64,000 nucleotides of DNA from Octopus sinensis (GCF_006345805.1 NC_043002.1:103416001-103480000), one strand, 5' to 3'. Numbered from the stretch's first letter, positions 6,972-59,827 are shown. The notes: generated by a model not told the origin, from the sequence alone. Program-made: numbers and translations.

Positions 6972-7380
6972 CTCTTTTACTCCTTTACTTGTTTCAGTCA
7001 TTTGACTGCGACCATGCTGGAGCACCGCCTTTAGTCGAGCAAATCGACCCTAGCACTTATTCTTTGGCAGCCTAGTAATTATCCTATCAGTGTCTTTCGC
7101 CGAGCCGCTAAGTTACAGGGGACGTAAACACACCAGCATCAGTTGTCAAGCAATGTCTTTTTTGTTTGCGGCGGTTAAAAAACAGACACACAAACACATA
7201 TTTATACATATAGACGACAGGCTTCTTTTCAGTTTCCGTCTGCCAATTCACTCACAAGTGTTTGGTTGACACGAGGATATAGTAAAAAACATTTGCCCAA
7301 GGTGCCACGCAGTGGGACTGAATCCGAAACCATGTGGTTGGTAAGGAAGCAACTTACCACACAACCACTCCTGCGCCTAT
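6972..7380 (-). mobile_element. tRNA-derived SINE, family A (near full length)
   Basis: Minus-strand head 'ataggcgcaggagtggttgtgtggtaag...ggattcagtccc' with A/B-box-like motifs; tail 'ggcggtgctccagcatggtcgcagtcaaatgactgaaac'; many similar copies in the window. Confidence 0.85.
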
Positions 7381-9324
7381 ACCATTTCATTTGCCCATTC
7401 CTAATTTTAACGCAATTTCGGTCAATGCATTTTTGCCGACTCTTTTACTAACAAATTGACTCTTCGTTGTCACGCCTCTTTCAGTACCGCATTCATGTTG
7501 GCATTCTTTTTATTCTTTTATTCTATTATTCTTTTATATGTTTCAGTCCAATGACTGTGACCATGCTGGAGCACTGCCATTGTGATCATCTTTCCACACC
7601 TCCACCTTTGTCGGAGCAGCTTTTTGGTGAAGGATGGAGTTCGATGCTACTGCCCTCTTTTGAGTTTCTTACTTAGATATTGGCTCATCCACGATCTCGG
7701 TGAGCCAGAGGTCAAGTTCACGTTGGAAAACGTTTACATCCACTCCACGAAGTCTTCTCGGATGCTTCGGCAGACAGTTAAACAGCTGTGGGCTCTTGAA
7801 ACCCGCCCAAGCTATTGCAGCGTATATAAAGCTCAATTGTCAGTTAAATCAGATTTCTCCAATTGTTGACGAGTGATACCGTCCACATATTTTGAAGGAA
7901 GTCTGAGGTCATAGAATTCAATTTTGTCCTTACTGCAATATCATGCTTGGTGATTCATTTATTTTCATTTTCGTTGTATGTCTGTGTATCTGCGTATGTT
8001 TGTGTGCATCTATGTATGTACATAAGCTTCCCAATTGTGGAGTTCAGTGACTCCATGATTTCGCGAGAGGCAATGTCATCGGAAACTGTAGCTGTTTTAA
8101 TAAGTATTTTCACGGAGATTATCATTTTACCCTTCCTCTCTCATACTATCCTCTCGTACTTCCACCCTTTCTTTTTCCATCTCTCTCTTCTCCCCCTCCC
8201 TCACTCTCTCTGAGTCTCTCTCCCGCTCTTCTTTACCTTTCTTTTCTCTGTTTCTATGTGGAAGATGTGATATCATCTGATATTACAGGTCATTTCTATT
8301 TTTGTTTTGCTAGACAGGACGTAAATACTCAATTTTGGGTTGCTCTAAACGAAAATCTACGTAGCAAACTTCGTAAGATCTCGATATAATAAGGAGATAG
8401 TTCAGATGCACAACTTTATATCCGTCATGCTGGAAAAATGGCACTAAGCGATAAACGAATTAAGATACGGCTTCGAAATTTTCCCGAAGACTGGCAGACT
8501 ATCAGATAGGGTAAAACCGATCGGAAAAACCTATTAACCTAAAGTGATTCTCTTGAAACAAGAGTCAATCAAAAATATCATTCCGTACTTCAATATCTCA
8601 GCAAAATTGTGGGAAAAAATTCTTCTTTTTGTTTTCTCGTAATTTGAACTCTTATCTATCACAACGTATATTGTAGAACATTTTACAAATCTGTTCGATT
8701 AATTTGGACACGTGTTCTTTAATTTAGAGCAATATTGGATGTATAGCAATCAATCGAACCCAGACGAAACAAAACAAACTATATAAAATAAATAAATAAA
8801 CAAACAAACATACGTCACGCATATATTTGGCTATGTTTACACTTTATACTGTGCTCATTAGTAAAATAAGGAGACGATATTCGTGCTTGTAAGGGTTGTA
8901 GGGCATTGACGCAAAATATATTCTAATTGGAAACGAGAAACAATGAAAATGGGTCTGACCCATTTATATACCTAAAATTTAACAGTTCTATGAACTTTCA
9001 GAATTTGAAATTTAGAAATCATAAAGATAGGTGGGGATTAATATAACCCTTAAAGAATGCATTTACTTAATATGTTTTCAGTAGATTTAATGGAAGTCAT
9101 AAAACAATACAAGGACGATAGAATTGTATTATATAGATAGGTAGATTGCTAGATAGATAAATATACATACGTCAACGCACACACATATGTGTGTGGAGGT
9201 GTCTATGTATGTGTATATATAACGTGTGTGTGTGAGTGTCGTCCAATCATACTAGATTTGTGCCACGCCCTCGCGTTGTTGTGTTTGTTTGTGCTTTCTT
9301 GTTTGGATTAATTTTATATATATA

Positions 9325-9359
<35 letters not shown>

Positions 9360-9363
9360 CTTT

Positions 9364-9540
9364 ACTGCCCAAAAGGGGCTAGACATAGAGGGGACAAACA
9401 AAGAAAGACAAAGGGATTAAGTCGATTACATTGACCCAAGTGAGAAACTGGTATTTTATTTATCGACCCCGAAGGATGAGTCCCGTTGTCTGTCCTTGTT
9501 TTCCCCCCTCTATGTTTAGCCCCTTGCGGGCAGTAAAGAG
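9364..9540. mobile_element. Two SINE family B 3' ends joined head-to-head (tails outward) in (TA)n
   Basis: 9364-9412 is an inverted copy of ~9487-9538; the interior holds the 'catccttcggggtcgataaa' domain on the minus strand. Confidence 0.7.
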
Positions 9541-13870: not shown

Positions 13871-15668
13871 TTATCTATGGTGGAGTGCTTACCATTTCTG
13901 GTGCCAACCATGACTATAATTATTTCATCCTTTTTAGAAATTGCAGCATCATTTAGAATTTAGAGTTCTTAATCAATATACCACGAAGATAGAAGCATTA
14001 CTATAAAATCTAAAGTGAAAAATTGATTACAAAGTGAATTTGTTAAGGTTAGGGTTATAAAGTGGATTTGTTAGGAGAATAGAGAACGTGGAATTCATAT
14101 CTGTATTCCGGATCTCTGAGAGTGTTGAAGGAATAAATGACACCATATCCGTTATCATATGAACGGAGAGCAAAGTTGAGCTGCTGAATGCACCAACAGT
14201 TTCAAGGTGGTCTTAAATCTGAGGACGGATTACGACTACTTTATTATTACCATGTATTTTGTTTCCTTAGAGAAAAATACCACACAAAGCAGATTAAAGG
14301 ATCGTGCTCTAGAAATACTATTCAATTCTGTTGAACTCATTACAATATATTTAAAGAGGTGCTAAGGCATGAGGCTGCTTGTGCAATAACTAAAAATATG
14401 TTACAAAGAAGGCATGGATATATTACTTGAACCCAGAATTCAGGAGCACATATTCAGGATTTAAAAAACATTAGAACATTAAAGTATGCAATATAGGCCC
14501 ATATTTCCTTAAAGGATCAGAGGTAGTTATTTGAAACAGTTTTTTTTTTAAAATATGTGCCGTCAAATACAATAAATTAACCTCTGGATAATCAGTCATG
14601 ATTTTGCTCCTTTTCTTTCGTTTAATTATTGGTCTTGTGTTAAAGGTGTTTGATTCGCAATCATAAGGCCACGCATGCGACTCACAAACGAGACAACACT
14701 ATTTAAACAAAGAAATTCATTTTCATGTTAACCCAGTCTTCTCAGCTCTAATGGGTACCATTCTGGCGCAAACCGATTTCTTTTCAGCTATCACATACTC
14801 CAAAAGTGGACCCTAAAATAACAAAATCGCGGCATGTCTTAACAAGTCATATTCTCTAGTAATTGACGACCAGGTGTACATAGGTCTGAATATGATATTG
14901 TATGCTCAATACATCAGTAGATGTCTCGATACAACACAAAGAAATATAACGCTGGTGTTAAAATGACCGCAGAGTAATACTTCTGTTCTATGCAGGTGCA
15001 GATTTTGGCGAGTTTTCCTGTGCTGCTACAGAGTAACAGCTCATTTAACATTGACTCAAATGGAGTCTCATGATATTTGAAAGGATTGGCTCACTCGCTA
15101 CTGAAATTGGAAAAAGATTACGCAAAAGCTTGCGTCTAAAAATAAAAGGAAAAACAAAAAGGCAAAAAGAAGAAAAGAATCACAGCTAAGTATATTTCTT
15201 GAGGACCGCTGGGGAGTTGTGTTTGTGAATGGTTTAACATCAATTTATCGTTATGGATAACATCTGTTGCCAAGAGAAATGTGTAGTCTCACTGTTCAGT
15301 TCTATTTTGAATTAGATGTAATGTTTGTGACTGCACTCATAAATATCTTGCTGATAAGGTGTTTTGTTAATTGACAGAATACAGGTGGGTTTTATGATGG
15401 ATATCGTAGATATAGGCTGGCTTGTTCTCTCTGTTTACCTGAGGTAGCTGTAAGCATCTTAGATGTATTTCTTTCTTTTTCTACTTTTTCTTCTTACTGC
15501 ATTGAGATAGCTTTGAAGATTTGCCTGTTTAGTGCGCGTGATATGTATGTAAGAATGTATACATATTCATATGCATACACACACACACGCATATACACAT
15601 AAATGCATGCACATATATATACATGTACATATATAAATATATGTTTATATATATAAACGTACGTGTGA

Positions 15669-22034: not shown

Positions 22035-22249
22035 TTCTGGGTTTCAGTCATTTGTCTGCGGCCATGCTGGAGCACCGCATTTAGTCGAACCAAACCGACT
22101 CACAGGACTTATTCTTTGTAAACCTAGTACGTATTATCTGAATCTCTTTTGCCAAATCGTTTAGTTTCGGGAACGTAAACACACCAACATCGGTTGTCAA
22201 GCGATGGAGGTGGGGACAAACACTAACACATAATATGTACAGATACATA

Positions 22250-22287
<38 letters not shown>

Positions 22288-22450
22288 CACACATGTATAT
22301 ACGATGGGCTTCTTTTAGTTTCCGTCTACCAAATCCACTCACAATGCTTTGGTCGGCCCGAGGCTATAGTAGAAGACACTTGGCCAAGGTGCCACGCAGT
22401 GGGCCTCAACCCGGAACCATATAGTCGGTAAGTAAGCTACTTACCACACA
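22035..22450 (-). mobile_element. SINE family A
   Basis: Tail 'tttcagtcatttgtctgcggccatgctggagcaccgc' and head 'gccacgcagtgggcctcaacccggaaccat' as read on the plus strand. Confidence 0.85.
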
Positions 22451-33500: not shown

Positions 33501-34531
33501 TTATATATATATGTGTGTGTGTGTATATATATATGTATGTGTGTGTGTGTTTGTGCGCGCCCACTTTCGTTTGCACATGTGTGAACGCTTGTATATGCGT
33601 GTGTGTCTGTGTGTCTGTGTGAGTGTTTGTGTTTCTGTGTGTTTGTGTTTCTGTCTGTATGTGTTCTGTTGCCGCTGTTTTTGTTATGGCTAAAAGTCAG
33701 TGTCATATAATCTCTCCCTCTATACGATACATTCATTTGTTAAATATCACGAAAACTAGCTCTGAACTTTATACGCTGAGATGCTTGAAAAGATGAAAGG
33801 AAAAAAAGTGATTTTGTTTTATTTTAATCTTTAAAGTCTGTATCCAAATTTTGACTTTGTACTTGCTGCTACAACGATATTATCTGCATTTACTTAGATA
33901 AACACTTCTATGTAAGCTTTTCTGAAATATTCGGGCTATATCCGCCATTGAAATACAGTGATTGCAGCTTTAAAGACATCCTTGTCCAAGAGAATGAATA
34001 AATATATCCTCTTAGATTTCTCTTGGAAATGTTATCAAGTAGGAGGTCGCTGGCGATCAAATAATATTACCCTCTTAACTTACTCTTTCATCTTTCTCGC
34101 TAGATTCCTATATTTCATATCAAATTATTTGCATCTACTCCGTCAGCTCCTACCACAAGAAACATCTCTACGACAATAAGAACAGCTGCTTCTCAAATTT
34201 CCTAAGAACTTTGGTAACGGGAAACACTTAAAGATATTGCCAAAAATGAAGGGTCGAAAAGAATATAATGGATAGAAAGAAAGAATACACACGTATATAA
34301 TTTTATACACGCACTCATACATCTTTTAGGACAAAAATATATAAATAATATAAAAATATACACTCTTAAGTATATACGAGTATGTGTTCAAAACGACACA
34401 TAAAAATATCTAAAAAATATACATGCTTGCATATATGCGTATATATAACTGTACACCTACACATATATTAAAGCGCTATTTATTTGCATATACATACATA
34501 CATAGATACATACATACATATATATATATAT

Positions 34532-35176
34532 AATTTAGCAATTAAGGACAACTACTTAATAAGGAAAACTTAACAAGAAATTGTCAGGTAGATAGCGTGA
34601 AAACCTCATAAGAGAAAAAATTTCGAAAATAATTATTTCTTATTGAACATATTAATTTATATATAGAGGGCATTATACATACATGCCAGATGGCATTATA
34701 CATACATGCCACACGCTAAGAGGGACAATTAGTCATTTCTACCAAAAATATTACTAATCCCACCGAATGCAATTTTTCAAAGTAAGACATTTAAAAAATA
34801 TAGACCTGTATCACAGTGATTTCATACTTACGTATCATCAGCAGGCCTGGATGTATCATACATAAACGACCCTGCCTCGCTTAAGCCGATCAGCTAACTG
34901 ATCAACATCAACGAAGCACATGGGTGAGTTTACATATATTACATCCTGTAAATGTCAGACTTTTTTCGAATTGCATTTCGGGAAAGGAAAAGTTTTTTCG
35001 GAATAAAAATTTAGCAATTAAGGACAACTACTTAATAAGGAAAACTTAACAAGAAATTGTCAGGTAGATAGCGTGAAAACCTCATAAGAGAAAAAATTTC
35101 GAAAATAATTATTTCTTATTGAACATATTAATTTATATATAGAGGGCATTATACATACATGCCAGATGGCATTATA
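34532..35176 (-). repeat. 476-bp hammerhead-bearing repeat unit, ~1.35 copies (retrozyme/pLTR-like)
   Basis: 'aatttagcaattaaggac' recurs at 34532 and 35008 (period 476); one hammerhead per unit. Confidence 0.85.
34802..34848 (-). ncRNA. Type I hammerhead in left arm, one A missing at the core/stem II junction
   Basis: Minus: AGGCCUG-CUGAUGA-UAC-GUAA-GUAU-GAA-AUCA-CUG-UGAU-A/CAGGUCU; identical to 41008-41055 except for a 1-nt deletion. Confidence 0.75.
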
Positions 35177-35644
35177 TATTTTTTTTCATCTGCGTTTTGA
35201 GAAATTTGCTGCCTTTTGTTGAGAGAGTTCGAATTTTTGCTTATCGTTGTTTGTGTTAATTGTTATTTGAACAGTGCCCGTTGTGTAACGGTAATTTTCG
35301 CCCTACGGGGCAGAAAATTCTGTATTTAAAATTTTTTTTCGGAATAAAAATTTTGTCCCTCTTAGCGTGTGGCATGTATGTATAATGCCATCTTATTTCT
35401 TTATTACGATTATACAATCGTTACATAGAAGTACAAATACAGGACATACATGCAAAACAAACAATTAAGAGGTTCGATTTTAAAATTTTCCATAACATTT
35501 GGATTAAAAAATTCGTCTATAAATTGTCCTTTACGTGACCAATAGAATATTATAACAATTCATAAACTTTCGATCTTACCGAAGTTTTAAACCCCGGCAA
35601 TTTATAAGGCCCCGCAGCTTTTGTTTCCTCTCCTCCCTCCATAG

Positions 35645-38600
35645 TTAAGCTGGGTTTCTGACACCCACCTTTTTTTCCACTTCCTTCCATCTTTTCTCAT
35701 ACACAGCCCGTGGTAAGATCCTCTTTTCCAGCCCCATTTTGCTCTTCAGATGATATCTGAAGTAAGTGAGCAAGCCGGGGCCCGAGACAAAGGATCCTAT
35801 CGCGACTCCTTCCATTCTTGTTCGCCACATGTATTCTTTTACTACTGCAACCGTGCAGTGAAAACATGCCTCACCTTCCTTCGAGAGTCCAGTTGGCGGT
35901 ATCATCTTAATCATAGACTCAGCCGACAGCTGTACTCGTCCCAGATGCGATAACACGTGTTCTGCGTAACTTATCAAGTCTGACAACTTCCGACAGTGTA
36001 CAAAAGCGTGCTGGACGGTTTCATCGTCCAACTCGCACCTTGGACACGTCGGTGGCACTGAAATTCCGTGCCGCGATAACTTCTCGCGAACAGGTAAAGC
36101 ATTCCTATAGCACTGCCAGGCCAGGGATCTTTGGAAATTATCCAAGTACCCCGTCCTGAAAGTCTTTTTAAACAGGTTGGTAAGCTGGTCTTCGTCAAAC
36201 CCCAGAGCCCCTCCTAGGACGTCGTCGTTCTTTGCCTCTACCAGCCTTCTATAAAATACCGAGGTGGTATTTCCGCAGCCGGCCTTGCCCGCCTTGTGGA
36301 TCAGCGTGAGTGCCTGTCGGCACTCCTTTTGCCATAAAGTCAGTTTCCATCTTTTGATGCGACCGGGTTTAAAATTCACTAAGGAGGCCGGTCTCGGGAA
36401 AAATTCCCCTGCCAGCGGACTCCACACCTTATCACCCTCCAGGTGGTGCCAGAGATGCCTCAGCCTCAACGCATGTCTGCGCATCATCAACCAAGGCATT
36501 CCTAACCCACCCTTTAACGGTTCCTGGCAGCAAACGGAGCGCCTCACAAGTGGCTTTCCTCCCTTCCACAAAAAGCGGAAAAGGATTCGCTCCAACTTGC
36601 TAAGCCATGAATCGGGGCAAGGGACAACGGTCAGGCGGTAAGTGATTACAGATGCAATGAACATCTGTACCACCTCCGCCCTTCCTTTCAAGGACAGAAA
36701 CCTTCCGGACCAGGTCCGTACTATGGCCTCCACCTTGCTCGTCACCTCACTCCAGTTCCTCTCCGTTTGGGAGTCTGGCCCAAACCAGACTCCTAGCAAC
36801 TTAACAGGGCCATCCGTCCAGTGTCCCACGACACTGGACGATATCGACTTGCTCCTCCAGGTGCCGAGGCGCAAGCCAACCGACTTGTCCTTGTTAACCT
36901 TTGCTCCTGCCACCGCCTCGTATCCTCTGATAGCCTCTTCCACACAAGGTAGCTGGGCCTCATTGGACACGATGAGGGTGACGTCATCCGCATAAGCAGT
37001 AACCGTCCTCCCACCTCCGATCTCATCCGAGTTGCTTCCCAGCCTCTCCAACTTTCGCAGCAATGGCTCAAGAGCCAACACGTACAAAAGTGGTGACAAG
37101 GGGCACCCTTGACGAACTGAACATTCGATCGAAAACGGTTCCGTTAGGTAACCGTTTATCTGGACGGTGGACTTGATGCCGCTATACATAGCGGAGATCC
37201 ACCCGCGAAATCCAGGGCCCAGTCCAGCCGCTTCGAGGACCGTCGCCAGGTACTCATGGTCTACCCTATCGAACGCTTTACTTTGGTCTAAATGGACCAT
37301 TACCCCGCCCTTGCCGGTTAATTTACCCACCCTGTCTAAGGTGTAGCGTATAAGGTGAAGATTGTCCTGGATCGACCTGCCTGGAATTGCACATGTCTGT
37401 GCTCTCCCTACAAGTTTCTCCACGAAAACCGTCAACCTTTTTGCCAACACCTTGGCCAAAATCTTTAACTCTACATTAAGTAGAGTTATGGGCCTGTAGT
37501 TACTAATGTTATCCCCCTTGCTCGGGTCTTTCTGGATTAGCGTCACCACTCCCCGGCTTACAGAGCTGGGAATTCTCCCATTCTGCTGCCAGTTCGTGTA
37601 GACGCCTGCCAATATTCCCCCGAACAAGTCCGGCATACTTTGGTAAAACTCGTAGGGCAGACCATCCAACCCCGGCGACTTCTCCCCGGCGCATCCGGCC
37701 AGTATCCCCTCTATCTCCGCGGGAGTGATCGCTTCTTCACAGCACTCCACCTCACGCCCCGAGAGCCGCGGCCGCCGGCCAGGAAGTCCTTTAAGGTCCT
37801 CCCCCGCTCCGGCGCCACACCACCCCCGAACACGCGGGCGAAATGCTGGTGAAGAAACTTTTGCATCTCCTCCTGTCCATAGATCTTTTGTCCCTGTTCG
37901 TCAGTTAAAGATTTGATTGAGGCTTTGTTACCTCTCTGACTCTCCACTCGACGGGCCCATCCGGCAACGTTAATACCTTCTCGTTTCCCAGCGCGTAGCT
38001 TAGCTCTGACTCTGCAACCTTCGTGTTTGGAGTTAAGGTGACGGTACAATACCGTCCTTGCCGCCAACACTCCGGATGCAGAGCCAGCTTCCATTGCCTC
38101 GTTTAGATTCTTAACTAAATCGTCCTCTATCCTAGACCTATCTAACCTTAGCTGATTGCTAAATCTAATGGACTCTGAACGAATGGCTCTTTTGAGGGAG
38201 TGCCACCATCTATTGTTAATGATGGTGCCACACAATGCCCTCTGTACTAACACCTTAATCCGGGTACGGAAGTCTTCACAATTCAAAATAGCCTTGTTCA
38301 GCTTCCAGTACCCGGGTCCCTGTCTATGACACTTGTCCAATTGCATCCTACACGTCACAAATTTGTGATCCGTGTAAGGCACAATGTGGAACTGTGGACA
38401 ACTAAACGTATCCTTATCTCTTTTCTTATATAAATATCCTATCTAAATACGATCTGCGTGAGCCGTCGTTGTTACTCCACGTCCACTGTGGAACGCTCGG
38501 CTCATCCAGTCGGTAACGGTCCACTAGATCAAAGCTCTCTAGTAGACCCTTGAGGCTAGGGTTCCCCTTCCTATTGGTTGAGCCAACACTGTCGACCCGC

Positions 38601-39033
38601 GCTTCAAGGACAGTGTTAAAGTCCCCTACTAGGATTACCGTTTTCGACGTCGCTAAAAAGGGCTCCAGGTTCCGAAAAAAACACGTCTGTCTACTCTCGT
38701 TCGGAGCGTAGACAGCTACCAACCTGAAGGACTGTTTACTTACGTGGGTCACATCCAGAACAACCAGCCTGCCTTCTGGGTCCAGAAAGACAGTACTTAC
38801 CTGCAAGTCCAAGCTCTTCCTGATAAGGACTGCCACGCCTCTGCCTCTTCCTCGGCTAGGAGAAATAAATTTCTCGAACCCATTTAGAAGAGGCGAGAAC
38901 GCTGGGCCCCGTTCATCTTGGACTCGGTTGCAATAGCTATGTCTACTCCATGTGTCATGAGGTCGTCCAGGAAGCAAATTTGTTTCCATTCCGACCCCAT
39001 TCCACGTACATTCACACAACCCAGCTTAGCCAT
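35645..39033 (-). CDS. LINE ORF2: AP endonuclease + reverse transcriptase + C-terminal CCHC; split by three single-base frameshifts (~38908, ~38428, ~37770)
   Basis: APE motifs NVRG, ATES, VAVYAP, GDFN, SYLDRIFI, TDHK; RT motifs SPGLDGLPYEFY, YRPITLLN, DQSKAFDRV, QGCPLSP, YADD; CPRCELDDETVQHAFVHC. Confidence 0.95.
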
Positions 39034-39187
39034 TGTCGGTGAGAGAAAAAAAAATGAACTTACGGTTGAGAAAGGGAGCATGACAGTTTAAATCTGCCCG
39101 CTTCCCCTTCTTCCTCCCTTGTGGTCGTAGCTGTAGGGCTCTTAACCGGCGTTGCCACCGGGCTCTGGGTAGGTGTGGTTGCCGGGG

Positions 39188-40488
39188 TTATACAAGTTTA
39201 CCCTCCAGTACTTCTTTTGTTACATCTCTAATCAGTCTGTTCTTTAGATGTTCCTGCAGTACTTCCTCCTTCCACCCGTCTTCCCCCACTTTTGCGAAGC
39301 GAGTGGTTGCTTTTATGTCTGTAGCCTTGCTAAATAGTTGGAATTTTGAAAATTTATAGTATTTATATACCCTTTCGTTTTTTTATCAAAAGCAATGATC
39401 TTATCATTTTTTTTTAAAGACTTTTTCACATCTTGTTTTATGGGGAGGGGCTTGGCAAACTGTTTCCCAATGAAAACAGTGCCATGGGGGTAGGGCTGGG
39501 GAATTTGCTTTATGTGTGTGTCTGCGGTGCTTGCTGATTTTTTCCTTGTTTGGAGAGGGGAGTCCAGGGTGTTGTCTTTTTTTCTTTTGTGTGTCACCTG
39601 TGTAAAATCCATTTGTTCGGTACAATCCGTTTCTGTTTCTTTTCTTGTCGTCGTTTTGTTTTCTTTTTCCCCCTTCTCCCCTTCAGTGTTAGAAGCACTT
39701 TGAGGAGGGGCTTCATTGGTTTTCTTTTTTTTTAAGCAGTTCGAGCGGACGTGCCCCTTCTCGCCACATTTAAAACATCTGGGTCTGCGCCCCTCCACTG
39801 ACACTCTCATGGACGTTCCATCTTCGTTAAATATTCTATCGGGCAGGTTCTCCAATATCTTGTCTCTGCTTGAACGAGGAGTTCCAGCGTCTGTCCCTTC
39901 CAGCGTACCTCCTTTCCTTCTCATCTGCAGAATCGAAATCTCCCGCTCAACATTGTGCAGGACCGCCGCTGCTACCCACATAATATCATACCCTCTCGGT
40001 ATGTCCTCTACCAGCAGTTTAGCTGTTCGTTTTCCCATATACGAGGGTAGCAGCATGATATCATCATTTTTCAGGGTCAATGATGACACCTCTCTTGCTA
40101 CCTCAGCCGAGTCAAAATGCACTTCAACAGTAGCGCTTCGAGCACCTCGAACAACATGGCGAATTTTGTCCCACACCGGGGACAAGCACTTTTCGACAAT
40201 TTCATTCCTGACGTCCATAATTTTCTTTTCTTTGTAGCTATACACTTTGTATATCACTGTTTTTTCCTTTATTTCTTGTACCTTCGCTTGCGGCGGCACA
40301 AGTCTGATCTCGTTTCCTTCCATTTTCACCAAGTTCCTAAATTCGAACAGTTGTTCGATCTTGAATTCAACGTCCATCATGGTTCCGCCTACCGCGGCCG
40401 AAAAAGACTGTTTTGTTACTTCCGTGTCCTTTAATTCACTTGTTCCCATCGCGGGAAAATCATTCTTCGACGCCAAGTCGAAATCCAT
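39188..40488 (-). CDS. LINE ORF1 (nucleic-acid chaperone with CCHC zinc knuckle); open to 39313 as given, probably to 39188 after one frameshift
   Basis: CFKCGEKGHVRSNC knuckle; an alternative frame continues FQLFSKATDIKATTRFAKVGEDGWKEEVLQEHLKNRLIRDVTKEVLEGKLV* to 39188 (inferred). Confidence 0.85.
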
Positions 40489-41007
40489 TTCTCAAAAAAA
40501 AAAATTACCTCGAAGGTAATAACAATTTTAAATACAGAATTTTCTGCCCCGTAGGGCGAAAATTACCGTTACACAACGGGCACTGTTCAAATAACAATTA
40601 ACACAAACAACGATAAGCAAAAATTCGAACTCTCTCAACAAAAGGCAGCAAATTTCTCAAAACGCAGATGAAAAAAAAAATATAATGCCATCTGGCATGT
40701 ATGTATAATGCCCTCTATATATAAATTAATATGTTCAATAAGAAATAATTATTTTCGAAATTTTTTCTCTTATGAGGTTTTCACGCTATCTACCTGACAA
40801 TTTCTTGTTAAGTTTTCCTTATTAAGTAGTTGTCCTTAATTGCTAAATTTTTATTCCGAAAAAACTTTTCCTTTCCCGAAATGCAATTCGAAAAAAGTCT
40901 GACATTTACAGGATGTAATATATGTAAACCCACCCATGTGCTTCGTTGATGTTGATCAGTTAGCTGATCGGCTTAGCGAGGCAGGGTCGTTTATGTATGA
41001 TACATCC

Positions 41008-41055
41008 AGGCCTGCTGATGAATACGTAAGTATGAAATCACTGTGATACAGGTCT
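41008..41055 (+). ncRNA. Type I hammerhead ribozyme in right arm, predicted cleavage AUA/ after 41048
   Basis: AGGCCUG-CUGAUGA-AUAC-GUAA-GUAU-GAA-AUCA-CUG-UGAU-A/CAGGUCU: canonical core, 7-bp stem I (one G-U), GNRA-capped stem II, short stem III. Confidence 0.9.
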
Positions 41056-41261
41056 ATATTTTTTAAATGTCTTACTTTGAAAAATTGCATTCGGTGGGAT
41101 TAGTAATATTTTTGGTAGAAATGACTAATTGTCCCTCTTAGCGTGTGGCATGTATGTATAATGCCATCTGGCATGTATGTATAATGCCCTCTATATATAA
41201 TATATATATATATATAATATATATATATATTATGTATGTATATAAATATATATGTATAATG

Positions 41262-41306
<45 letters not shown>

Positions 41307-41351
41307 ATTATGTATGTTATATATATATATATGTATAATGTAAATATATAT

Positions 41352-41382
<31 letters not shown>

Positions 41383-42259
41383 GATTATGTATCTATGAAT
41401 GCACTCACAAACACATTAGAACACTATTGTTAAATTTATTTATACACGCACACACACACACATACACACACATACATACATACATATATATATATATATA
41501 TCAAGGGAAAGGGAGATGGTGTCAGAGAAAGTTATATTGATTGATTGATATGCTGAAGAATACAAATCAATAAACCCGTATAAGTTTAAATATGCATTCA
41601 CCACCGCGCACTTGCATAAAGGCATGACTGTACGTAGCTAAGTATATAGGTGAACAGGTGTATGGTAACCTTCTTCGTTGATAGTAACTAATTTTGTATA
41701 TGTTCGTAATTATGAAACAAGAAGGAAAGTAAGGAAGTAAAAATAATATCCGCTTTCAAGTCTTGCTATGTCACATGGTTTCCTGCATTTATATTGAATA
41801 AAACAAAGTTTGTTTCAATTATTTTGCAAACCCCCACCTAGACATGTATCCACTTAATACTAACAGTTAAATTATATTGAAAATTTTTTAAGGTTTCAAT
41901 GAAAACTTCATTTAATTGATTCGCTTCAGAACATCCACTACGATAGACATAGGAATATGAAACTTTAAAAATATTTGTGCATCTGTGTGTGTATTTGTGG
42001 AAACACACAAGCACAGACACTCACAGACCCTCACACATATCCACACTCACACTCACACACACACACAACACACACACACCACACACACACACACACACAC
42101 ATATATACATATATATATATATATAATATATATATATATTATATTTGTATTATATATATACAATTACACACAAAAACACTAAGAACAAAAAAAACATAGC
42201 ACCACACTTCAAACCAAAACATTACCTTTTATATCAACACACAACCCCAGAAACAGTGA

Positions 42260-59474: not shown

Positions 59475-59827
59475 TAAATAGGTGCCGGCGTGGCTGTGTT
59501 GTAAGATTGCTTCTCAACCACATGGTTCCGGCTTAAGTCCCACTGCATGGCACCTTGGGCAAGTTAGTTCTACTATAACCTCAGGCCGACCAAAACCTTG
59601 TGAATGGATTTTATATATATTTGTATGTGTGTGTGTGTGTTTGTGTGCCTGCACTTGTTCCCCCCCACCACCACCACCACCATCACTTGAGAACCGACGA
59701 TGTGTTTACGTCCCAGTAACCTAGCGGTTTGGTAAAAAGAGACGGATAGAAGTAGTACAATGCTTACAAAGAATAAATTCTTGAGTTGATTTGATCGACC
59801 ACAGGCAGCAATGACTGGAAGAAATAA

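What the first reader, a model, noticed from the sequence alone, without database searches (positions are those of the whole stretch)
34532..41200. Tx1/L1 LINE bracketed by 677-bp hammerhead-bearing inverted arms: a candidate LINE-retrozyme composite
Seen: a full-length APE-RT LINE lies between two ~99.4% identical inverted arms (34657-35333 / 40524-41200). Each arm carries an outward-facing hammerhead, and the whole sits in (TA)n. The left arm also contains an inverted copy of most of the LINE 5' UTR, joined to the repeat at the same junction. It extends 125 bp further into the tandem unit than the right arm, so it was not simply copied from the right arm as it stands now. Known: L1/Tx1 LINEs do not normally have terminal inverted repeats or hammerheads, while Penelope-like elements and retrozymes carry hammerheads and PLE insertions often have an inverted terminal copy. 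Inference: a hammerhead repeat array captured the LINE, and the composite was re-mobilised as one unit by PLE-type double priming, giving a LINE that can hitchhike in a ribozyme vector.
Basis: partly seen in the sequence, partly recalled or inferred. Interest (0 to 1): 0.92.

Follow-up and report, generated by a model that had tools for sequence, protein, structure and literature searches.

The report
Octopus LINE nested in inverted hammerhead repeats
An ordinary L1-type jumping gene has landed inside a small ribozyme-carrying repeat that lies in two back-to-back inverted blocks; the layout is real, but one locus cannot show that the whole package ever moved as a unit.

Summary
Arms 34657-35339 and 40518-41200 are inverted copies (684 columns, 99.1%). 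Each is 1.1-1.4 units of a 476-bp tandem repeat plus the first ~160 nt of the LINE 5'UTR.

Each arm carries an outward-facing type I hammerhead motif. The right copy is canonical in the core. The left copy lacks one base in helix II. Rfam calls neither. The repeat RNA is very strongly structured (z = -10.8), so it looks like a retrozyme or PLE-derived element.

The LINE (35394-40680, minus strand) is L1-like. It has its own perfect 13-bp target-site duplication inside the repeat, so it entered by ordinary TPRT. A relative in Octopus sinensis sits the same way, with an 18-bp duplication, inside another short tandem element that has no copy of the LINE in its inverted part.

The head-to-head repeat blocks in a TA microsatellite match known Penelope-type insertion architecture. 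The 5'UTR piece in the left arm fits repair copying from the right arm, followed by end-joining. It fits co-mobilisation of the composite about as well in number of steps.

No other copy could be reached, so re-mobilisation is untested (about 0.2). The LINE lies antisense to the ribozyme, and its reading frames are broken as assembled. Moderate-to-low interest.

The parts
34519..34531 (.). Short (TA)n preceded by (CATA)n. Left flank of the whole structure.
   Evidence: Sequence read; repeat families D2/D6.
34532..35176 (-). Left repeat block: 476-bp unit (34532-35007) plus the first 169 nt of a second unit. The hammerhead-sense strand is the minus strand, with its 3' end outward (left).
   Evidence: Direct repeat D7 with spacing 476; BLAST self-matches.
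34802..34848 (-). Left hammerhead copy. Identical to the right copy except for one A missing from helix II (CUGAUGA uac-guaa-guau GAAA).
   Evidence: It fails the strict descriptor. The indel is T versus TT, so it could be a consensus error.
35177..35339 (+). Inverted copy of the first ~160 nt of the LINE 5'UTR, joined to repeat position 169 exactly as in the right arm.
   Evidence: Inverted repeat I1; alignment; junction strings.
35334..35352 (+). About 20 nt, ttttttcggaataaaaattt. This is repeat positions 457-476 plus 1-4, in the orientation of the left block. It is read here as the residual end of left unit 2. The 5'UTR|repeat junction has 0-2 nt of overlap.
   Evidence: Comparison with the unit sequence at 34988-35010.
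35353..35393 (-). 41 nt of repeat (positions 157-197) just 3' of the LINE. 35381-35393 is the 3' copy of the 13-bp TSD. 35352/35353 is the head-to-head inversion junction.
   Evidence: 100% matches to 34688-34728 and 41129-41169.
35394..40680 (-). L1-like LINE body, 5287 nt. It starts with T10-CATCTGCG and ends with AATAAAGAAATA.
   Evidence: The 5' and 3' ends align to the Octopus sinensis relative in L003. The RT's best solved-structure matches are human L1 ORF2p, E = 1.5e-48 (8c8j_A, deposited as RNA-directed DNA polymerase) and 3.8e-48 (8sxt_A, LINE-1 ORF2 protein).
39313..40488 (-). ORF1, 391 aa, with a CCHC zinc knuckle.
   Evidence: 49% identical to Octopus sinensis LOC115216432.
35645..39057 (-). 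ORF2 (APE, linker, RT, zf-RVT) in four frame segments: 39057-38902, 38911-38420, 38463-37561 and 37648-35648.
   Evidence: Pfam hits; tblastn against L003 ORF2; indel positions.
40538..40564 (-). 5'UTR hairpin with a UACG loop, conserved in the O. sinensis LINE (UUCG loop, with a C-to-U change that keeps a G.U pair). A second copy lies in the left arm.
40681..41200 (+). Right repeat block (positions 169 down to 1, then 476 down to 126). The hammerhead-sense strand is the plus strand, with its 3' end outward (right). 40681-40693 is the 5' copy of the LINE TSD.
41008..41055 (+). Right hammerhead, type I topology, all core positions canonical. The predicted cleavage site is after A41048.
   Evidence: Descriptor hit with helices I/II/III of 7/4/4 bp. 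The looser descriptor gives 2 hits in 400 shuffles. No Rfam match.
41192..41382 (.). TA-rich microsatellite/minisatellite on the right flank. It is interspersed with tatgtatgtata motifs that resemble the repeat's own hairpin segment.
   Evidence: TRF; families D4/D5.

Best explanation
This is a nested transposon locus in an octopod genome, not a demonstrated new mobile unit. I propose three steps.

**Step 1 (inferred).** A non-autonomous, hammerhead-bearing 476-nt repeat of the retrozyme / Penelope-derived kind inserted into a TA microsatellite.
- It took the usual Penelope-type form: partial tandems plus an adjacent inverted 5'-truncated copy.
- This gave two blocks joined head-to-head at 35352/35353, with their ribozyme-sense 3' ends outward.

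**Step 2 (shown).** An L1-like LINE inserted by ordinary target-primed reverse transcription into the right block.
- It entered at repeat position 169/170, antisense to the ribozyme.
- It duplicated 13 bp of target.

**Step 3 (inferred).** A break in the left block was repaired using the inverted right block as template.
- Synthesis ran from shared repeat sequence across the repeat|LINE junction and 160 nt into the 5'UTR, then stopped.
- The end was joined to repeat position ~457.
- This replaced about 287 nt of repeat with 160 nt of 5'UTR. Such exchange would also keep the arms nearly identical.

**Function.** The locus has no evident function of its own. If transcribed, the 0.68-kb inverted arms would give double-stranded RNA.
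For: **The LINE is an independent TPRT insertion.**
- It has a perfect 13-bp TSD, found on the LINE strand only at the expected places: flanking the LINE, and once more as the intact site in the right block. The other two copies lie in the left block on the opposite strand.
- Its 5' end (T-run then CATCTGCG) and 3' end (AATAAAGAAA) align with the ends of the O. sinensis relative. That relative has its own 18-bp TSD.
- An Argonauta relative has a 17-bp TSD.

**The O. sinensis parallel.**
- There the LINE also sits inside a short tandem element: a ~355-nt unit present 1.3 times, plus an inverted 49-65 nt piece and a 13-bp TSD.
- That inverted piece contains no LINE sequence.

**The repeat looks like a structured ribozyme element.**
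- The hammerhead motif is unlikely by chance.
- The circular fold of the 476-nt unit has z = -10.8 on the hammerhead strand and -5.9 on the other strand.

**The architecture is a known one.** Partial tandems, an adjacent inverted 5'-truncated copy and a microsatellite bias are described for Penelope-like elements (PMC8557442).

**The 20 nt at 35334-35352 fit a leftover.** They are repeat positions 457-480 in the orientation of the left block, as expected for an untouched remnant.

**Difference counts lean the same way.** The arms differ at 1 site in the inner 329 nt and at 3 sites in the outer 351 nt. That is the expected direction, but it is not significant.
Against: - Only one locus was available. 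Steps 1 and 3 are inferred from junction anatomy alone.
- The model needs three events. The co-mobilisation model needs about the same number.
- No Penelope-like ORF lies in the window. There is no ORF of 150 aa or more outside the LINE apart from low-complexity ones.
- The inversion junction lies only 28 nt from the LINE 3' end. Under this model that is a coincidence of about 6%.
- The right block stops at repeat position 126, while the left runs a further 125 nt. Some loss or microsatellite turnover at the right edge must be assumed.
Confidence: 0.45

Rival explanations
1. A transcript in hammerhead sense, running through repeat, antisense LINE and repeat, was reverse-transcribed Penelope-style at a (TA)n site from both nicked strands.
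- This produced a main copy (35353-41200), 5'-truncated at repeat position 197.
- It also produced an adjacent inverted copy (35352-34532), 5'-truncated at 5'UTR nt 160 after a 24-nt template switch.
- The LINE therefore travelled as a passenger.
For: - The geometry fits. Both 3' ends face outward, abutting TA repeats. Both 5' ends are truncated and joined in the middle. Both arms have the identical repeat|LINE junction. The outer end points differ.
- An adjacent inverted 5'-truncated copy and a microsatellite bias are standard for PLE insertions, and PLEs can retrotranspose foreign RNAs in trans (PMC8557442).
- The arms are nearly identical. Possibly only 2 substitutions are real.
Against: - There is no second copy of any junction to show mobility (searches found nothing; searches gave no same-family copy except L003).
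- It needs an extra 24-nt template switch to explain 35334-35352.
- It needs a 6.7-kb antisense-LINE transcript that escapes its own hammerhead, plus a recently active PLE. No PLE ORF lies in the window.
- The O. sinensis LINE-in-repeat locus has no LINE sequence in its inverted part.
- This kind of passenger mobilisation of a LINE has not been described, to my knowledge.
Confidence: 0.2
2. A simple direct repeat array received the LINE. A later break at repeat position 197, just 3' of the LINE, was then repaired by replicative template switching (MMBIR/fold-back type).
- That repair copied 24 nt of repeat first.
- It then copied the region from 5'UTR nt 160 outward, in inverted orientation.
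- No Penelope-type step is involved.
For: - The two closely spaced junctions (35339/35340 and 35352/35353) have 0-2 nt of overlap and a short templated insert between them. This is typical of such repair.
- An unrelated 327-bp inverted duplication of flank sequence lies next to the O. sinensis element (L003 8562-8888 versus 9189-9497). Inverted duplications therefore do occur around these loci.
Against: - It needs the right block to have once extended at least 125 nt further.
- It needs a third junction at 34531/34532 back into flank DNA.
- It does not use the known PLE-type head-to-head architecture, which the O. sinensis host element also shows on a small scale.
Confidence: 0.2
3. Assembly artefact. 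The inverted left arm is a mis-join or a fold-back chimeric read carried into the consensus.
For: - Complex tandem/inverted PLE-type structures are known to trouble assemblies (PMC8557442).
- The indels between the arms, and the LINE's private frame breaks, sit in short homopolymer contexts typical of long-read consensus errors.
Against: - The arms are not identical (2 substitutions).
- The left arm has 125 nt of repeat that the right arm lacks.
- The junctions are clean, with a short templated insert.
- The structure lies mid-window between unique flanks.
Confidence: 0.08

Closest known systems
Metazoan non-LTR retrozymes (tandem repeats with type I hammerheads; Cervera and de la Pena 2020, PMC7229834; Li et al. 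2026 preprint, 10.64898/2026.07.22.740005)
   Same: - A tandemly repeated unit of a few hundred bp carrying a type I hammerhead motif.
- A very strongly self-paired unit RNA (z = -10.8).
- No coding capacity.
- Penelope-like insertion features.
   Different: - The unit is 476 bp, just above the reported 150-450 bp.
- Only 1.1-1.4 units and one ribozyme are present per block.
- The helix II closing pair is A-U.
- Rfam models do not score it.
- Genomic copy number and circular RNA are unknown.
- The element has not been reported for cephalopods in the papers I could search.
Penelope-like element insertion architecture (pseudo-LTRs, adjacent inverted 5'-truncated copy, microsatellite targets; Craig et al. 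2021, PMC8557442)
   Same: - Partial tandem.
- A head-to-head inverted copy with the 3' ends outward.
- A TA microsatellite at both ends.
- A hammerhead in the repeated part.
   Different: - There is no PLE reverse transcriptase or GIY-YIG ORF.
- The sequence between the arms is an APE-type L1-like LINE in antisense.
L1-superfamily LINEs, including the Tx1 group with its target-specific families (Kojima; PMC4494074 and PMC4640811 for context)
   Same: - ORF1 with a CCHC knuckle.
- ORF2 with APE, RT and a C-terminal zinc motif.
- A 13-18 bp TSD.
- A defined 5' end.
- Nested in a repeat in two octopus species, with a shared GAGGGACAA 16-19 nt past the insertion point.
   Different: - Assignment to the Tx1 clade was not tested.
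- The two target sites themselves are unrelated in sequence.
- The Argonauta relative is not in a repeat.
- There is no poly(A), only AATAAAGAAA(TA).
- ORF2 is split before the RT in all three species.
L1 twin priming (5' inversion; Ostertag and Kazazian 2001, from my own knowledge)
   Same: Two cDNAs primed from the two nicked strands and joined head-to-head by microhomology.
   Different: Twin priming inverts the 5' part of a single LINE copy without duplicating it, and places that part at the LINE's 5' side. Here the LINE is complete, and the inverted piece lies beyond its 3' end and duplicates its 5' end.

Membership tests
Hammerhead ribozyme, type I | Core C3-U4-G5-A6-N7-G8-A9 and G12-A13-A14, an A15.1-U16.1 pair, and H17 not G | tested here: met
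   Right copy 41015-41048: CUGAUGA ... GAA A...U A. The left copy has the same core.
Hammerhead ribozyme, type I | Three helices in type I topology (open helix I; closed helices II and III) | tested here: met
   Right copy: helices I/II/III of 7/4/4 bp, with a GUAA loop on helix II. The left copy loses one base of helix II, leaving 3 bp and a bulge.
Hammerhead ribozyme, type I | Score above threshold with the curated covariance models (Rfam hammerhead families) | tested here: not met
   No hammerhead family was reported at gathering score, nor at E <= 10, even on 101 nt.
Hammerhead ribozyme, type I | G10.1-C11.1 closing pair of helix II (nearly invariant in natural ribozymes; from my own knowledge) | tested here: not met
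   The pair is A-U in the right copy.
Hammerhead ribozyme, type I | Self-cleavage | not testable with these tools
   Needs in vitro transcription of both variants.
Metazoan non-LTR retrozyme | Short tandem repeats (150-450 bp), each with a type I hammerhead | tested here: inconclusive
   The unit is 476 bp, tandem over only 44-172 nt of overlap, with one ribozyme per block.
Metazoan non-LTR retrozyme | Highly self-paired unit RNA | tested here: met
   Circular MFE -143.8 versus -89.0 +/- 5.1 kcal/mol for shuffles; z = -10.8.
Metazoan non-LTR retrozyme | Many genomic copies, expressed as linear and circular RNA | not testable with these tools
   There is no other copy in the window or in the searchable collections. 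The source genome was not available.
Penelope-like element insertion | Partial tandem plus an adjacent inverted 5'-truncated copy, in a microsatellite | tested here: met
   Junction at 35352/35353; outer ends at 34532 and 41200 in TA repeats. The feature list comes from PMC8557442.
Penelope-like element insertion | PLE reverse transcriptase with GIY-YIG endonuclease ORF | tested here: not met
   The only long ORFs in the 64 kb are the APE-type LINE and low-complexity frames. A degraded PLE was not searched for.
L1-superfamily LINE | APE endonuclease, RT and C-terminal zinc motif in ORF2; nucleic-acid-binding ORF1 | tested here: met
   Pfam Exo_endo_phos, RVT_1, zf-RVT and zf-CCHC. The best solved relatives are human L1 ORF2p at 1.5e-48 (8c8j_A) and 3.8e-48 (8sxt_A), against R2 at 5e-26.
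L1-superfamily LINE | Target-site duplication from TPRT | tested here: met
   13/13 bp at 40681-40693 and 35381-35393.
L1-superfamily LINE | Intact reading frames (autonomy) | tested here: not met
   There are two private 1-nt frame breaks in the APE region (~38903, ~38429), plus the split before the RT that all three species share. The private breaks could be consensus errors.
Tx1 clade / target-specific LINE | Phylogenetic placement in Tx1, and repeated insertion at one target sequence | tested here: inconclusive
   - No reference set was available for placement.
- Two of the three copies seen lie in short tandem elements, with GAGGGACAA 16-19 nt downstream (post hoc p of about 0.002).
- The target sites differ, and the Argonauta copy is elsewhere.

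The most novel reading that the evidence does not exclude
A hammerhead-bearing, Penelope-mobilised repeat that had been hit by an L1-like LINE was retrotransposed as one 6.7-kb unit with the LINE as antisense cargo. This left the typical PLE signature of a main copy plus an inverted 5'-truncated copy. One retroelement class would then have carried another as a passenger. A weaker version: this octopod LINE lineage preferentially targets such repeats next to a GAGGGACAA motif.
Probability: 0.2. Interest if true: 0.7.

Novelty: new member of a known kind. Interest (0 to 1): 0.35.

Why it matters
- **If the ordinary reading is right.** The locus adds a probable retrozyme-like hammerhead repeat to cephalopods. 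It also gives a clean, base-resolved example of nested retroelements reshaped by repair between inverted repeats. That is useful for annotation but not surprising.
- **If the composite did move as a unit.** Penelope-type machinery would be shown to carry kilobases of foreign retroelement sequence. That bears on how non-autonomous ribozyme elements and LINEs exchange parts.
- **A cheap test in public genomes.** The possible target preference of the LINE (two species, a shared 9-mer at the same offset) can be tested in public octopus genomes.

Tried and rejected
**Rfam.** I scanned the whole window at gathering score, 8 kb at E <= 10, and 101 nt at E <= 10. No hammerhead family appeared. The motif call therefore rests on my own descriptor and its shuffles.

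**Looking for other copies.**
- Protein searches with the RT, ORF1 and the O. sinensis ORF1 gave no same-family copy except L003.
- An exact look-up of ORF1 found nothing.
- DNA pattern scans for the hammerhead and for the conserved 5'UTR hairpin found nothing in the collections scanned: viral (hammerhead only), genome (hairpin only) and metagenome (both).

**Distant relatives.** L001, L002 and L004-L006 have no hammerhead and no similar repeat.

**Classical L1 twin priming.** Rejected. The inverted piece is on the wrong side and duplicates LINE sequence rather than inverting it.

**LINE-driven 5'/3' transduction into an older remnant.** Rejected, because no TSD exists at 35352 and 41201.

**The repeat as the LINE's own 3'UTR or 5' monomers.** Rejected.
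- The LINE ends align with its relatives exactly at the TSDs.
- The repeat does not align to the O. sinensis UTRs: local scores were 40-60 on both strands.

**A hammerhead-like string in the O. sinensis host element** (UUGACGA-GGGA...UCCC-GAAA, starting at about L003 15300). Rejected, because it has U at position 3 and G at position 17.

**mir-297 and mir-3119 matches.** These are TA-repeat and hairpin artefacts.

Full report
**What is there**

The window is AT-rich, microsatellite-rich eukaryotic DNA.
- The LINE proteins have their closest relatives in cephalopods. The RT is 57% identical to a protein of Argonauta hians. ORF1 is 49% identical to Octopus sinensis LOC115216432.
- The O. sinensis locus L003 carries a related LINE at 84% nucleotide identity over ORF2.
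- The source is therefore most likely an octopod whose genome is not in the searchable collections.

**The observation**

A self-comparison gives inverted arms 34657-35339 and 40518-41200, 684 columns at 99.1%. No further copy lies in the 64 kb.

The arms are built from a 476-bp tandem unit (34532-35007; 34532-34703 repeats at 35008-35179).
- The left block holds positions 1-476 plus 1-169.
- The right block holds positions 126-476 plus 1-169.
- In both, position 169 is followed by the start of the LINE 5'UTR (T-run, then CATCTGCG), for 160 nt on the left.

The arm differences are two T/TT indels and two substitutions.

**The hammerhead**

On the plus strand at 41008-41055 the right arm reads aggccug-CUGAUGA-auac guaa guau-GAA-aucacugugau-A|caggucu.
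- This is a type I topology with every core position canonical. Helices I, II and III are 7, 4 and 4 bp.
- A looser descriptor (5, 3 and 3 bp) hits 2 times in 400 dinucleotide shuffles of the window.
- The left copy (34802-34848, minus strand) lacks one A of helix II.

Two cautions apply.
- No Rfam hammerhead model reports the motif at any threshold tried.
- The helix II closing pair is A-U rather than G-C.

The 476-nt unit, folded as a circle, has an MFE of -143.8 kcal/mol against -89.0 +/- 5.1 for shuffles. That gives z = -10.8 on the hammerhead strand and -5.9 on the complement.

A structured, non-coding, tandem unit with a type I hammerhead matches the description of animal non-LTR retrozymes (PMC7229834). 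These are now argued to derive from Penelope-like elements (10.64898/2026.07.22.740005). Each block here has only one ribozyme, so this locus could not release a unit-length RNA.

**The LINE**

The body is 35394-40680 on the minus strand (5287 nt).
- ORF1 (391 aa) has a CCHC knuckle. ORF2 has APE, RT and zf-RVT.
- The nearest solved structures to the RT are human L1 ORF2p (E = 1.5e-48 for 8c8j_A, 3.8e-48 for 8sxt_A), ahead of R2 (5e-26).
- It is therefore L1-like. Placement in Tx1 was not tested.

ORF2 is in four frame segments.
- Two 1-nt breaks in the APE region are private to this copy and lie in short homopolymer context.
- The break before the RT is shared with O. sinensis. It is matched by an in-frame stop in Argonauta, so it may be a genuine layout.

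**The key new fact: the LINE has its own target-site duplication**

AGATGGCATTATA occurs at 40681-40693, directly before the LINE 5' end. It occurs again at 35381-35393, directly after the 3' end AATAAAGAAATA. The repeat then continues in register for 28 nt more.

The UTRs align with those of the O. sinensis LINE right up to these points.
- That copy (L003 9747-15272) has an 18-bp duplication, TTTCATCGCTACCTGGTG.
- An Argonauta relative has a 17-bp one.

The LINE therefore entered the repeat by ordinary TPRT, antisense to the ribozyme.

**The O. sinensis host element**

The O. sinensis copy also lies inside a short tandem element.
- The unit is about 355 nt, present 1.3 times, with an inverted 49-65 nt piece at one end and a 13-bp duplication.
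- I found no hammerhead in it.
- The 9-mer GAGGGACAA lies 19 nt past the insertion point in the window and 16 nt past it in L003. It occurs nowhere else in L003. The post hoc probability is about 0.002.
- This is a lead for target preference, nothing more.

**The junctions**

Reading the plus strand from the left, the order is:
- repeat 1-476, then 1-169;
- 5'UTR 1-160;
- ttttttcggaataaaaattt, which is repeat 457-476 plus 1-4;
- at 35352/35353, a flip to the reverse complement of repeat 197-157;
- the LINE in reverse;
- the right block in reverse.

In hammerhead sense, both blocks start at 35352/35353 and end outward in TA repeats. This is the published Penelope-type architecture: partial tandems, an adjacent inverted 5'-truncated copy and a microsatellite bias (PMC8557442).

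**Explanations**

(B) My preferred reading has three steps.
- The repeat alone inserted in that head-to-head form.
- The LINE then landed in the right block.
- A break in the left block was later repaired from the right block. Synthesis crossed the repeat|LINE junction, ran 160 nt into the 5'UTR and aborted. The only homology beyond the LINE is 28 nt. The end was then joined at repeat 457.

On this reading the 20 nt at 35334-35352 are an untouched leftover.

This explains the shared junction and the different outer ends in one event. It needs an extra 24-nt template switch, a long antisense-LINE transcript that escapes its own ribozyme, and a recently active PLE.

(C) A fold-back or MMBIR-type inverted duplication of a simple array is a third, purely DNA-level option.

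The arms differ at 1 site in the inner 329 nt and 3 sites in the outer 351 nt. That leans towards B, but the difference is not significant. I could not separate these models on one locus.

My estimates are B 0.45, A 0.2, C 0.2 and artefact 0.08. The remainder is left for explanations not listed.

**What failed**

No collection searched contains the repeat, the hammerhead or the conserved 5'UTR hairpin. No protein search reached another copy of the family. More distant LINE relatives have no hammerhead nearby.

**Verdict**

The claim that the LINE hitchhikes in a ribozyme vector is not supported by anything beyond geometry, and a conventional history explains every junction. The parts are members of known kinds. 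The arrangement is a curiosity worth a quick genome-wide junction count.

Noticed in passing
window 40538-40564 (-), copy at about 35296-35322 (+); L003 9876-9903: The LINE 5'UTR has a hairpin with a UNCG tetraloop (UACG here, UUCG in O. sinensis). It is conserved within an otherwise diverged UTR, and one C-to-U change keeps a G.U pair. It is possibly a functional RNA or DNA element of this LINE lineage.
   Followed up: partly
window ~37560-37900; L003 12918-13005; L001 9869-9871: ORF2 is interrupted between the APE-linker part and the RT at the same place in three species. Two octopus copies have a frame change, and Argonauta has an in-frame stop. This may be a real three-ORF or recoding layout rather than decay.
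   Followed up: partly
window 38903 and 38429; 34835 and 34881: The two private frame breaks in the APE region and the two indels between the arms are all 1-nt length differences in short homopolymers. They could be long-read consensus errors. If so, the LINE and the left hammerhead may be intact.
   Followed up: partly
L003 9499-9746 plus 15291-15557: The O. sinensis LINE sits in a ~355-nt tandem element (1.3 units) with an inverted 49-65 nt end piece and a 13-bp TSD, CACATTATTATAT. Its fold is moderately structured (z about -3.5). No hammerhead was found. Its terminal hairpin gives spurious miRNA hits.
   Followed up: partly
window 34720, 35361, 41137; L003 15307: GAGGGACAA lies 16-19 nt past the LINE insertion point in both species. 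It occurs nowhere else in L003 (43.6 kb), and in the window only within the repeat copies. It is a possible target-recognition motif.
   Followed up: partly
L003 8562-8888 versus 9189-9497: A 327-bp inverted duplication (88.7%) of flank DNA ends exactly at the boundary of the host element, including its TSD.
   Followed up: no
L004 1-15884 (ENA ERZ25071366 ctg14421c): A distant relative of the LINE (about 42% RT identity) lies in a head-to-tail tandem with a 6508-bp period at 99.2% identity.
   Followed up: no
window 41201-41400: The TA-rich right flank contains repeated tatgtatgtata / atgtataatgta motifs resembling the repeat's own duplicated hairpin segment (ggcattatacatacatgcc). The edge of the right block may have expanded into a minisatellite.
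   Followed up: no
window 22041-22450, 6972-7155, 59507-59609: Other interspersed repeats are shared with the O. sinensis locus at 83-88% identity. They were not characterised.
   Followed up: no
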